A DNA stretch of 63,946 nt, counting the filler, from Reticulomyxa filosa (Eukaryota > Protista > Foraminifera): assembly GCA_000512085.1 (NCBI GenBank). It is 19 parts of 19 records of this genome, joined end to end, with 100 filler letters (N's around TTAATTAATTAA, not from the genome) between each part and the next. Parts side by side here need not be neighbours in the genome. Positions count along the whole stretch, not along the records: positions 22,477 to 24,343 come from ASPP01021922.1; 18 more parts are not named here. One strand, written 5' to 3'. The notes beneath the pieces were generated by a model. The model was not told the DNA's origin and did not search any database. It saw only the letters and a program-made list of their open reading frames with translations. The position numbers and the translations under genes were made by a program. Numbering within the stretch: position 1 is the first letter of the stretch; each line of letters begins with the position of its first letter. Positions 22,477-24,599 of the stretch are shown one piece after another.

Positions 22477-22519
<43 letters not shown>

Positions 22520-22607
22520 GTTTATATAAATCTTGTTTATATTGTTCATTTTTTCATTGAACTAAATTAATAACGTATAATAATTAATAATATGATGGGG
22601 GCTGTAG

Positions 22608-24290
22608 ACGTCGCTGTCGTGGAGCCGTGAGGGATGCTGGGTACATAACCAAACGACAAACGAAACCACTTGCATTTGCACTCATTTGACCTCGTTCTTT
22701 GCCGCCATTGCGACAAAGGAAACGAATGTCTATCAATGTGGAAAAAAGGTTAAATCCACTTCCAAGTTTATATTGCAAGCCCCGATATCTTGGAATATCT
22801 TTTCTTTCTTGTACGCCTTTATCTTATTTTATGCGCTTTATCAAATGCGACGAATTCGGAAAACCACCAAATCTTTGGTATTATTATTATTGTTTTTTTT
22901 TTTTTTTTTTTGTTTATTTGATTTGATTTGATTTAATTTGATTTGTTTATTTTTTTTTTATTTAAAAAAGACGGAAAAAAATGAATTGGCGACGTTGCGG
23001 AATTTGTTTCAAATTCATCTGCTAGTTGCGTTCACAGCTCTGTTGTGGTTCGTGGTTTGGTACGCGGCCAGCTTCACCAACGCGGTAAACCTGTTTGTAA
23101 TCACAGTGCTAATTCGCTTCGGTGCCCAATTGATCGTCTTTGTGTTAATGTTGATCGCGTGGACGCAGCCGCTGCAAGTGTTCTTGTTCGGAGCCGGGTC
23201 TCGAAACATCCAGAGGATACGTATCCTTTCTTTCTGGTCCGCTGCGATTCTGTTTTGGCTTGTCTTGATTATTTTATGTATCTTATTTTTGGAAAGAATT
23301 ATTGATAGAGTTGCATGTTAAGTTTACATATCAATGTAAATATAAATAAATATATACATATATATATATATGTATATTTATATTTATATATTTATACGTT
23401 TATTTAATTTATAGTTTGGATAATATATTATGTATACGTAATATATTAAAGTGTACTGGGCTCAATTGATCAGTGCGGCGATCGTTGGAGTAATGTATCT
23501 GTTTACAGGACTTGGAATTGTATTTGTATTGATAACGGTAACGTCAAAATCGGGACAAAAGTTAGGGAATAGTGACAAATCAGCAATTTTTTTGGTGCGC
23601 ACGTCGTCCGGGATAATATGCTTATGCTACGCCGTGGAGGTAATAACTCTGATTGTCGGCATTTTGAAAGATAATCCTTTGACCGATACACAGACGATAG
23701 TGTGGAATGCGTTCTTCATATTAAGTGACATCATCGTATCTATCGCTGTCATTAGCTTGTACAAACCGAGAATCGATAAGGTGTACGCAGAGACTTTGCA
23801 CATCCCCGAATTTTACTCGGGACGAGATGCTTGCTATTGTCCCGAGTTCATTGACTGCTTTGTCCTCTGCGGATGTGCGCGCTGCTGCGCGTGCTGCGCA
23901 CAAACAGACTCGGGCTATCGCAGACCTCGGGATGTTCGATGCTACTCGTGGATCTCTCAAAAAATCCAATCCGATTCTTCGCCGCCGCAATTGAATGCAA
24001 CCATGTCTGTTGATGGAGACACGACCACAAACAAACACGTAGAAGAAGTGCCATCTCCTCAAGCCAAACGTTATCGACTAAGTATTAAAGAAACAGAACA
24101 AGAATTAAACAGACATAGTAGCAATCCTTCTCTTGGAGATACACAAACCAGCCAAATTGCTCAAAGTCAAAAAAAGTTAAAATCATCTGTTAACGAACTC
24201 ACAATTGAAACTAGTGCTCCCAATCACTCGGACTTTAGTGAAAAGAAACAGCCTTTTTATACTGCCGACACTCCACAAGATTCATTTTAA
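22608..24290 (+). CDS. GPS(GAIN)-motif 7-transmembrane receptor-like protein (adhesion-GPCR-like architecture, TOM1/GPR137-like 7TM), 5' truncated
   Basis: After the acceptor at 22606-22607 the frame reads TSLSWSREGCWVHNQTTNETTCICTHLTSFFAAIA (GPS consensus W..GC...T.C.C.HL/T.F). Introns 22878-22970 and 23317-23451 join seven hydrophobic helices and a Cys-rich, Ser/Thr-rich tail ending in TAA at 24288-24290. Confidence 0.8.
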
Positions 24291-24599
24291 ACTCTTTCAC
24301 ATTTTATACATTTGTGATACATGTAAATGATTTTTTTTATGTTNNNNNNNNNNNNNNNNNNNNNNNNNNNNNNNNNNNNNNNNNNNNTTAATTAATTAAN
24401 NNNNNNNNNNNNNNNNNNNNNNNNNNNNNNNNNNNNNNNNNNNTTGTTTATTCAATCTTTACTGCAATTCTTAATAAAAATTGCTTTAATTTATATATGT
24501 TGCCTACTTGCAGCAATTGCAAAAAGTATAAAAAACCCTTGGGTGTTTTATATTTTTTCGTTCCGACATGGAAATAGTCATGTGTAAAACAATCAATGT

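What the first reader, a model, noticed from the sequence alone, without database searches (positions are those of the whole stretch)
22608..24290. GPS autoproteolysis motif fused to a TOM1/GPR137-like 7TM: a possible independently assembled adhesion-type receptor
Seen: the exon starting at 22608, upstream of where the ORF track begins, encodes WSREGCWVHNQTTNETTCICTHL/TSFFAAIA. This has the GPS Trp/Cys pattern, an intact H-L/T cleavage triad (22683-22691) and a hydrophobic Stachel-like peptide. Two in-phase introns link it to exactly seven predicted helices. Known: GPS/GAIN is characteristic of adhesion GPCRs (secretin-like 7tm_2) and PKD1 proteins. Inferred: this 7TM looks more like TOM1/THH1/GPR137 (TM3 ending LIVFVLMLIAW, TM6 IICLCYAVE, TM7 FFILSDIIVS) than 7tm_2. 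The linker from cleavage site to TM1 (about 35 aa) is also long. If correct, this is a self-cleaving tethered-ligand receptor architecture built on a different 7TM scaffold in a protist. I cannot confirm from here that it is undescribed.
Basis: partly seen in the sequence, partly recalled or inferred. Interest (0 to 1): 0.85.

Follow-up and report, generated by a model that had tools for sequence, protein, structure and literature searches.

The report
GPS cleavage motif on orphan 7TM
A foraminifer (Reticulomyxa filosa) gene fragment puts the self-cleaving GPS motif of animal adhesion receptors and polycystin-1 directly in front of seven membrane helices that match no known receptor family, a combination the recent literature places only in animals and their closest relatives.

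Summary
The piece is the whole 1867-bp contig ASPP01021922.1 of Reticulomyxa filosa. It carries three GT-AG exons (22608-22877, 22971-23316, 23452-24290).

Exon A hits Pfam GPS above the curated cut-off (32.5 bits). It has an intact H-L/T triad at 22683-22691, a hydrophobic stalk and TM1. Exons B and C add six more helices and a Cys-rich tail.

The only relative found among 1.84 billion representative proteins is a marine metagenome gene (24-34% identical). It is colinear with all three exons: GPS, a stalk of the same length, TM1, an intron in the same cytosolic loop, then TM2-7. Upstream it has a REJ domain (40.8 bits), the polycystin-1/PKDREJ hallmark, and about 320 residues where a GAIN domain would fit.

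Neither protein's 7TM hits 7tm_2, PKD_channel, THH1/TOM1, GPR137 or any solved structure.

My reading is a REJ/GPS autoproteolytic ectodomain on an orphan 7TM.

Not shown:
- the GAIN fold (both models had low confidence);
- splicing by RNA (no run was listed);
- cleavage.

No search or fold was run on the joined exons.

The parts
22477..22607 (+). 3' end of an upstream intron (T-run, 15% GC) with acceptor AG at 22606-22607. The upstream exons, which hold the rest of the GPS and the ectodomain, lie beyond the contig end.
22608..22877 (+). Exon A (90 codons, phase 0 to 0): C-terminal two thirds of the GPS motif, the stalk and TM1.
   Evidence: aligns to the L002 GPS-TM1 region at 30% identity, E 1e-11
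22614..22697 (+). GPS motif stretch matched by Pfam PF01825 (profile positions 14-42 of 45). It holds W, G-C, C-x-C and two N-x-T sequons.
22683..22691 (+). H-L/T autoproteolysis triad. The predicted scissile bond lies between L (22686-22688) and T (22689-22691).
   Evidence: HLTSFF is identical in the relative
22689..22784 (+). 32-residue stalk with a hydrophobic Stachel-like start (TSFFAAIA). It is a candidate tethered agonist and the last GAIN strand.
   Evidence: same length in the relative, one gap
22785..22847 (+). TM1
22878..22970 (+). Intron 1 (93 nt, GT-AG, phase 0, 10% GC, in-frame TGA), located in the first cytosolic loop.
   Evidence: the relative has a phase-0 intron in the same loop
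22971..23316 (+). Exon B: TM2 (23004-23069), TM3 (23085-23162) and TM4 (23223-23291). There is no in-frame ATG before TM3.
23317..23451 (+). Intron 2 (135 nt, GTTAAG..AG, phase 1, 12% GC, several in-frame stops).
   Evidence: the relative is uninterrupted here and colinear
23452..24290 (+). Exon C: TM5 (23457-23540), TM6 (23583-23666), TM7 (23694-23762), a conserved juxtamembrane stretch, a Cys-rich cluster (23832-23900), an acidic/basic tail and the TAA stop at 24288-24290.

Best explanation
The piece is the 3' part (about 484 codons) of a Reticulomyxa filosa gene for a large surface receptor.

Its extracellular region ends in a GAIN-type autoproteolytic module, of which only the last GPS strands are on this contig. 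By analogy with its one known relative, the missing upstream part should hold a signal peptide, a REJ domain and about 320 residues of GAIN size.

The GPS is followed by a 32-residue stalk, seven TM helices of a family not recognised by any current profile, and a cytosolic tail with a conserved Cys cluster that is probably palmitoylated.

Inferred mechanism:
- The protein cleaves itself between L and T of HL/T in the secretory pathway.
- The two fragments stay associated through the buried TSFF... strand.
- Pulling on the ectodomain, or ligand binding to it, exposes or repositions the stalk.
- The stalk then acts on the 7TM bundle as a tethered agonist, as in adhesion GPCRs and polycystin-1.

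Shown here: the gene model, the GPS motif, the 7TM topology, and conservation of the order with REJ in the relative.

Inferred only: the GAIN fold, cleavage, tethered agonism and the downstream coupling.
For: - GPS above the Pfam cut-off with an intact triad; the same stretch aligns to aGPCR GPS strands in PDB.
- Canonical, frame-keeping introns with a sharp GC contrast.
- Exon B has no start codon of its own.
- An exhaustive HMMER scan found one relative, P0002. Its locus L002 is colinear with all three exons. HLTSFF is identical, the stalk length is equal, and a phase-0 intron sits in the same loop.
- L002 carries REJ at 40.8 bits, GPS at 22.1 bits, a signal-peptide-like first exon and about 320 residues between REJ and the cleavage site.
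- No PLAT, PKD_channel or 7tm_2 hit.
- Positive-inside rule: 13 K/R in cytosolic loops against 3 in outer loops.
- Rhizarians have most GPCR signalling components (PMC3971589).
- The polycystin-1 stalk acts as a tethered agonist (PMC11458180).
Against: - The window holds neither a REJ domain nor the bulk of a GAIN domain; the contig ends in an intron.
- The GAIN fold was not confirmed even in the relative: the single-sequence AlphaFold model had pLDDT 38, and no Pfam GAIN model or PDB hit was found beyond the GPS.
- The family has only two members, so conservation statistics are thin.
- No RNA run was listed, so splicing is not shown directly.
- The HLTSFF conservation can be explained by the structural role of the last GAIN strand alone, without any agonist role.
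Confidence: 0.7

Rival explanations
1. It is a very divergent true adhesion GPCR, with a class B2 (7tm_2) helix bundle. The GAIN-7TM module would then be older than Holozoa, or was transferred into Rhizaria.
For: - The GPS lies directly before seven helices, with a hydrophobic Stachel-like start.
- The best PDB matches of exon A are all aGPCRs.
- By eye, the conserved I/V-H at the cytosolic end of TM2 and M-L-x-x-W in TM3 recall the class B IHxNL and WMLxEG motifs. This comparison rests on my memory of those motifs and was not tested.
Against: - PF00002 gives no hit for any exon, for P0002 or for its sub-pieces at E<=10.
- Single sequences and two-sequence profiles hit none of the many solved aGPCR or class B 7TMs.
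- There is no Cys pair at the TM3 top and ECL2, and no Pro/Gly kink motif in TM6.
- The relative's ectodomain has REJ, which is not an aGPCR domain.
Confidence: 0.12
2. The 7TM is a THH1/TOM1/GPR137-type scaffold onto which a GPS module was grafted.
For: In the ESM Atlas feature search of exon C, the nearest named clusters include THH1_TOM1-3 and GPR137 clusters at 0.77-0.82. Seven of the ten best family-bearing hits share a family or clan.
Against: - All scores are under 0.9, which the tool calls a lead only, with 130-147 shared features where 170 or more is typical of true family hits.
- The search was limited to named clusters.
- Exon B's nearest clusters are unrelated bacterial hypotheticals.
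- Neither PF06454 nor PF27607 hits any piece.
Confidence: 0.13
3. It is a cut-down polycystin-1/PKDREJ homologue, whose membrane part descends from the PC1 11-TM region.
For: REJ plus GPS is the PKD1/PKDREJ/suREJ signature. From my own knowledge, TM number varies in that family: sea-urchin REJ proteins have 1, 2 or 11 TM helices.
Against: - There is no PLAT domain: the loop after TM1 is only about 21 residues.
- PKD_channel does not hit.
- All outer loops are 5-13 residues, leaving no room for a TOP domain or a pore loop.
- There is no PDB hit to PC1 or PC2.
Confidence: 0.08
4. It is a gene-model artefact: the GPS-TM1 exon belongs to a single-pass protein and the six later helices to a separate neighbouring gene.
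For: In L002 the automatic gene caller split the locus into separate ORFs, and P0002 begins with an ATG. No RNA evidence is available.
Against: - In the window, exon B has no in-frame ATG before TM3, and its frame is closed upstream.
- Phases and GT-AG sites fit.
- The same order and spacing hold in two organisms that share only 24-34% identity.
- The L002 ORFs overlap or abut in different frames with GT-AG introns between them.
Confidence: 0.05

Closest known systems
Adhesion GPCRs (class B2; for example ADGRF1, ADGRG6, ADGRL3)
   Same: The GPS has the W/C pattern and an HL/T triad directly before TM1. A hydrophobic Stachel-like peptide follows, then seven helices and a cytosolic tail.
   Different: The 7TM gives no 7tm_2 signal. 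The stalk is somewhat longer at 32 residues. The relative's ectodomain carries REJ rather than aGPCR adhesion or HRM domains. The host is a foraminifer, whereas the GAIN/7TM module is reported as restricted to Holozoa (PMC12716839; PMC10445921).
Polycystin-1 / PKDREJ / sea-urchin REJ proteins
   Same: A REJ domain is followed by a GAIN-sized region and a GPS before the first TM helix. In PC1 the stalk acts as a tethered agonist (PMC11458180).
   Different: There is no PLAT domain after TM1. There are seven helices rather than eleven, with short loops. There is no PKD_channel or TOP domain.
THH1/TOM1/GPR137 seven-pass proteins
   Same: Seven helices with short loops, and a weak language-model proximity for TM5-7.
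   Different: There is no profile hit. To my knowledge those families have no GPS/GAIN ectodomain; this was not checked here.
GAIN-domain proteins of Tetrahymena and Dictyostelium (Arac et al. 2012)
   Same: These are non-holozoan protists that encode GPS/GAIN (PMC3321182).
   Different: The passages I read of that paper do not describe their membrane architecture. I could not fetch those proteins to compare them.

Membership tests
Adhesion GPCR (class B2) | GPS motif with the H-L/T(S) triad immediately N-terminal to TM1 | tested here: met
   PF01825 at 32.5 bits against a cut-off of 22.5; triad at 22683-22691; 32 residues to TM1
Adhesion GPCR (class B2) | Complete GAIN fold (helical subdomain A plus beta subdomain B) enclosing the GPS | tested here: inconclusive
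   This region is not on the contig. In the relative L002 about 320 residues lie between REJ and the cleavage site, but the AlphaFold model had pLDDT 38, and there was no Pfam or PDB hit beyond the GPS.
Adhesion GPCR (class B2) | 7TM domain matching 7tm_2 (PF00002) | tested here: not met
   No hit at E<=10 for exons A-C, P0002 or its sub-pieces. No solved aGPCR or class B chain was hit by sequence or by two-sequence profile. The search was exon by exon only; the joined protein was not searched.
Adhesion GPCR (class B2) | G-protein coupling activated by the tethered agonist | not testable with these tools
   This needs expression and signalling assays.
Polycystin-1 / PKDREJ family | REJ domain upstream of the GPS | tested here: inconclusive
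   Met in the relative: L002:1690-2484 scores PF02010 at 40.8 bits against a cut-off of 25. The corresponding part of the window gene is off the contig.
Polycystin-1 / PKDREJ family | PLAT domain in the first cytosolic loop | tested here: not met
   The loop is about 21 residues in the window and of similar length in L002. No PLAT hit.
Polycystin-1 / PKDREJ family | Eleven TM helices ending in a PKD_channel-like six-helix unit with a large outer loop | tested here: not met
   Seven helices, outer loops of 5-13 residues, no PKD_channel hit.
THH1/TOM1/GPR137 | Match to PF06454 (THH1_TOM1-3_dom) or PF27607 (GPR137_N) | tested here: not met
   Neither family is listed at E<=10 for any piece. The only signal is a feature-space proximity of 0.77-0.82.

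The most novel reading that the evidence does not exclude
Foraminifera and at least one other marine protist carry a third class of GAIN/GPS membrane receptor, beside adhesion GPCRs and polycystin-1. It has a REJ-GAIN ectodomain with a conserved cleavage site and stalk. That ectodomain was joined, independently of the holozoan event, to a 7TM scaffold unrelated to class B. Tethered-agonist receptor design would then have arisen more than once, or predates the split of Rhizaria and Opisthokonta.
Probability: 0.4. Interest if true: 0.8.

Novelty: new variant of a known kind. Interest (0 to 1): 0.6.

Why it matters
Recent surveys say that the GAIN domain and a 7TM were first linked in stem holozoans, and that elsewhere the two occur only in separate genes (PMC12716839, PMC10445921). 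Here a GPS with an intact cleavage triad is joined to seven helices in a rhizarian and conserved in a second protist. The ectodomain is of the polycystin-1 (REJ) type and the helix bundle matches no known family.

If it holds, it gives a natural test of whether self-cleavage plus a tethered stalk is a portable activation module that works on different membrane scaffolds. It also gives a handle on where the aGPCR and PC1 designs came from. In addition, it flags a receptor family that current GPCR mining misses, because that mining relies on 7TM profile hits.

Tried and rejected
**Homologue searches**
- Word-indexed searches with exon C, exon B and P0002 found only self.
- Two metagenome-contig scans, using the TM5-7 alignment and the GPS-TM1 alignment, gave no confirmed relative.
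- L003 is 100% identical to part of L002, so it is not an independent sighting.

**RNA evidence**
- The look-up of sequencing runs listed no run, so read laying could not be used.

**Structure**
- Single-sequence AlphaFold of the L002 GAIN/GPS/TM1 ORF gave pLDDT 38.2.
- Single-sequence AlphaFold of P0002:1-290 gave pLDDT 46.6.
- Foldseek of the latter against PDB gave nothing below E 1.6. I treat that as meaningless, not as evidence of a new fold.
- MAFFT misplaced the exon fragments against P0002 (alignments A1, A4, A5). No family alignment was therefore used for folding.

**Profile and feature searches**
- PDB searches with both 7TM halves, as single sequences and as two-sequence profiles, gave only noise.
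- The Atlas feature search of exon B returned unrelated bacterial clusters.
- Weak Pfam rows (Srg, E 0.023; DUF7027; DUF1218; DUF4750) are rejected as hydrophobic noise.
- Whole-ORF Pfam scans of the L002 ectodomain missed REJ; a sub-piece recovered it.

**Other**
- The 'polycystin' literature hits with Reticulomyxa are the radiolarian name Polycystinea, not the protein.
- The joined spliced protein was not searched or folded.

Full report
**Source and scope**

The piece 22477-24343 is the entire 1867-bp contig ASPP01021922.1 of assembly GCA_000512085.1. That assembly is Reticulomyxa filosa, a freshwater naked foraminifer in Rhizaria (PMC7744380; lineage). Nothing outside the piece was used.

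No search or fold was run on the joined protein, and that step remains to be done.

**Observation**

The frame is closed immediately upstream by TAG at 22605-22607, which overlaps the acceptor AG at 22606-22607. Further upstream there is only 15%-GC sequence and a T-run to the contig end. The exon therefore starts at 22608, and the preceding coding sequence is on another contig.

Pfam GPS (PF01825) matches residues 3-30 at 32.5 bits, E 1.2e-07, against a cut-off of 22.5. It covers profile positions 14-42 of 45. phmmer against PDB aligns the same stretch to the GPS strands of ADGRF1, ADGRG6, ADGRG2, ADGRE5 and ADGRL3, and to nothing else. The H-L-T triad is at 22683-22691.

**Gene model**

| Feature | Coordinates | Notes |
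|---|---|---|
| Exon A | 22608-22877 | GPS end, stalk, TM1 |
| Intron 1 | 22878-22970 | 93 nt, phase 0, 10% GC |
| Exon B | 22971-23316 | TM2-4 |
| Intron 2 | 23317-23451 | 135 nt, phase 1, junction codon TTG, 12% GC |
| Exon C | 23452-24290 | TM5-7, tail, TAA stop |

Both introns are GT-AG and carry in-frame stops. Exons are 42-45% GC.

Exon B has no in-frame ATG before TM3, and its frame is closed upstream. TM2-7 therefore cannot be a separate gene.

The layout is as follows:
- a 32-residue stalk;
- TM1;
- a K/R-rich loop of about 21 residues, split by intron 1;
- TM2 to TM7 with short loops;
- a juxtamembrane stretch, a Cys-rich cluster and a tail of about 130 residues.

Cytosolic loops hold 13 K/R and outer loops hold 3. 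This fits a GPS outside the cell and a tail inside.

**Relatives**

Word-indexed searches found only the contig's own 265-residue call, P0001. An exhaustive HMMER scan of 1.84 billion representatives with exon C found one other protein, P0002 (386 aa, E 6e-14).

P0002 lies on a 5.7-kb Tara Oceans metagenome scaffold, L002. A Logan contig, L003, is 100% identical to part of L002 and is not independent.

All three window exons align colinearly to L002:

| Window exon | Aligns to | Identity | E-value |
|---|---|---|---|
| A | end of the ORF just upstream of P0002 | 30% | 1e-11 |
| B | P0002 residues 16-113 | 24% | 6e-13 |
| C | P0002 residues 137-276 | 32% | 4e-19 |

The exon A alignment has a single gap across GPS, stalk and TM1, and HLTSFF is identical.

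L002 has a GT-AG, phase-0 intron in the same cytosolic loop as window intron 1. It has no intron at the site of window intron 2, where the alignment runs straight through. This comparative evidence takes the place of the missing RNA evidence; no sequencing run was listed.

**The relative's ectodomain**

Read by eye with GT-AG introns, the L002 gene is complete. In order it has:
- a signal-peptide-like first exon;
- a 469-codon exon;
- an 80-codon exon;
- a 292-codon exon ending in GPS, stalk and TM1;
- the P0002 exon.

The precomputed annotation listed REJ for the large ORF. My whole-ORF scans found nothing. The sub-piece L002:1690-2484 hits REJ (PF02010) at 40.8 bits, E 1.4e-10, against a cut-off of 25. 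HMMER's composition filter was probably hiding the domain in this N/I/Y-rich protein.

The L002 GPS scores 22.1 bits, just under the cut-off, and has all four cysteines.

About 320 residues lie between the expected end of REJ and the cleavage site. That is the size of a GAIN domain as defined by Arac et al. (PMC3321182). Whether this region has the GAIN fold is not shown:
- the single-sequence AlphaFold model had pLDDT 38;
- PDB sequence searches were blank.

**The seven-helix bundle**

No Pfam 7TM family appears for any exon, for P0002 or for its sub-pieces, even at E<=10. That includes 7tm_2, Dicty_CAR, Frizzled, PKD_channel, THH1_TOM1-3 and GPR137_N. The weak rows (Srg at E 0.023, several DUFs) are hydrophobic noise.

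Neither single sequences nor two-sequence profiles of TM2-4 and TM5-7 hit any solved membrane protein, although dozens of aGPCR, class B and polycystin chains are in that set.

It returned THH1_TOM1-3 and GPR137 clusters at 0.77-0.82, which the tool calls a lead only. Exon B gave unrelated bacterial clusters.

A single-sequence model of P0002:1-290 had pLDDT 46.6, and its Foldseek search was blank. This says nothing either way.

Features that argue against particular families:
- Against a polycystin-type membrane part: the loop after TM1 is too short for PLAT, and the outer loops of 5-13 residues leave no room for a TOP domain or a pore loop.
- Against class B: there is no Cys pair at the TM3 top and ECL2, and no Pro/Gly kink motif in TM6. 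This comparison with class B motifs rests on my own knowledge.

Both relatives share three motifs after TM7: YK.RID..Y, YCP.FID and CACCA. The last looks like a palmitoylation cluster; this is an inference.

**Interpretation**

The best-supported reading is a receptor with a polycystin-1/REJ-type autoproteolytic ectodomain on an orphan 7TM.

By analogy with aGPCRs and PC1, it should cleave itself at HL/T, hold its two fragments together through the buried TSFF... strand, and use the stalk as a tethered agonist. The PC1 stalk does act this way (PMC11458180). Rhizarians have most GPCR signalling components (PMC3971589), so G-protein coupling is possible but untested.

The identity of HLTSFF at 30% overall identity shows constraint on the site. 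That constraint can be explained by the structural role of the strand alone.

**Novelty**

The 2025 survey of GPCRs in relatives of animals states that the GAIN/7TM module is restricted to Holozoa and arose in stem holozoans, with the two domains in separate genes elsewhere (PMC12716839). The social-amoeba survey found no GAIN on amoebozoan or stramenopile family-2 receptors (PMC10445921). GAIN domains as such are known from Dictyostelium and Tetrahymena. No paper in the held library links Foraminifera with GPS or GAIN.

This case differs from both known GAIN receptor classes. I rate it a new variant of a known kind. How far it goes depends on whether the 7TM is truly unrelated to class B, which two sequences cannot settle.

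**Limits**
- The family has two members.
- The window lacks the ectodomain.
- The GAIN fold, the transcript joins and cleavage are untested.
- The joined protein was not searched.

Noticed in passing
L002:1090-2595: The whole 501-residue ORF gives no Pfam hit even at E<=10, but the sub-piece 1690-2484 hits REJ at 40.8 bits. HMMER's composition filter probably hides domains in N/I/Y-rich proteins of AT-rich protists, so whole-protein scans of such genomes can under-report domains.
   Followed up: yes
window 22878-22970 and 23317-23451: Both introns are exact multiples of three (93 and 135 nt) and extremely AT-rich. Intron 1 has a T-run and GATTT-type repeats. Intron 2 is TA/TATA-rich. Each carries in-frame stops, so retention would truncate the protein.
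   Followed up: partly
L002:3790-3970: The intron in the first cytosolic loop of the marine relative is GC-richer (0.37) than its flanking exons (0.2-0.3). This is the reverse of the R. filosa pattern. An alternative donor 15 nt downstream cannot be excluded without RNA.
   Followed up: no
window 23763-23900; P0002 residues 225-276: Cytosolic motifs after TM7 are conserved in both proteins: YK.RID..Y, YCP.FID and a CACCA cluster. This may be a membrane-proximal helix plus a palmitoylation site, or a docking site for a partner.
   Followed up: no
L002:908-995: A short first exon has a hydrophobic, signal-peptide-like start, followed by a GT-AG intron (996-1075). The marine relative's gene therefore appears complete on one 5.7-kb scaffold. 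Its organism is unknown (coding GC about 25%).
   Followed up: partly
window 22477-22516: The contig begins with a 40-base T-run. The assembly probably broke in a low-complexity intron, which is why the ectodomain exons are missing.
   Followed up: no
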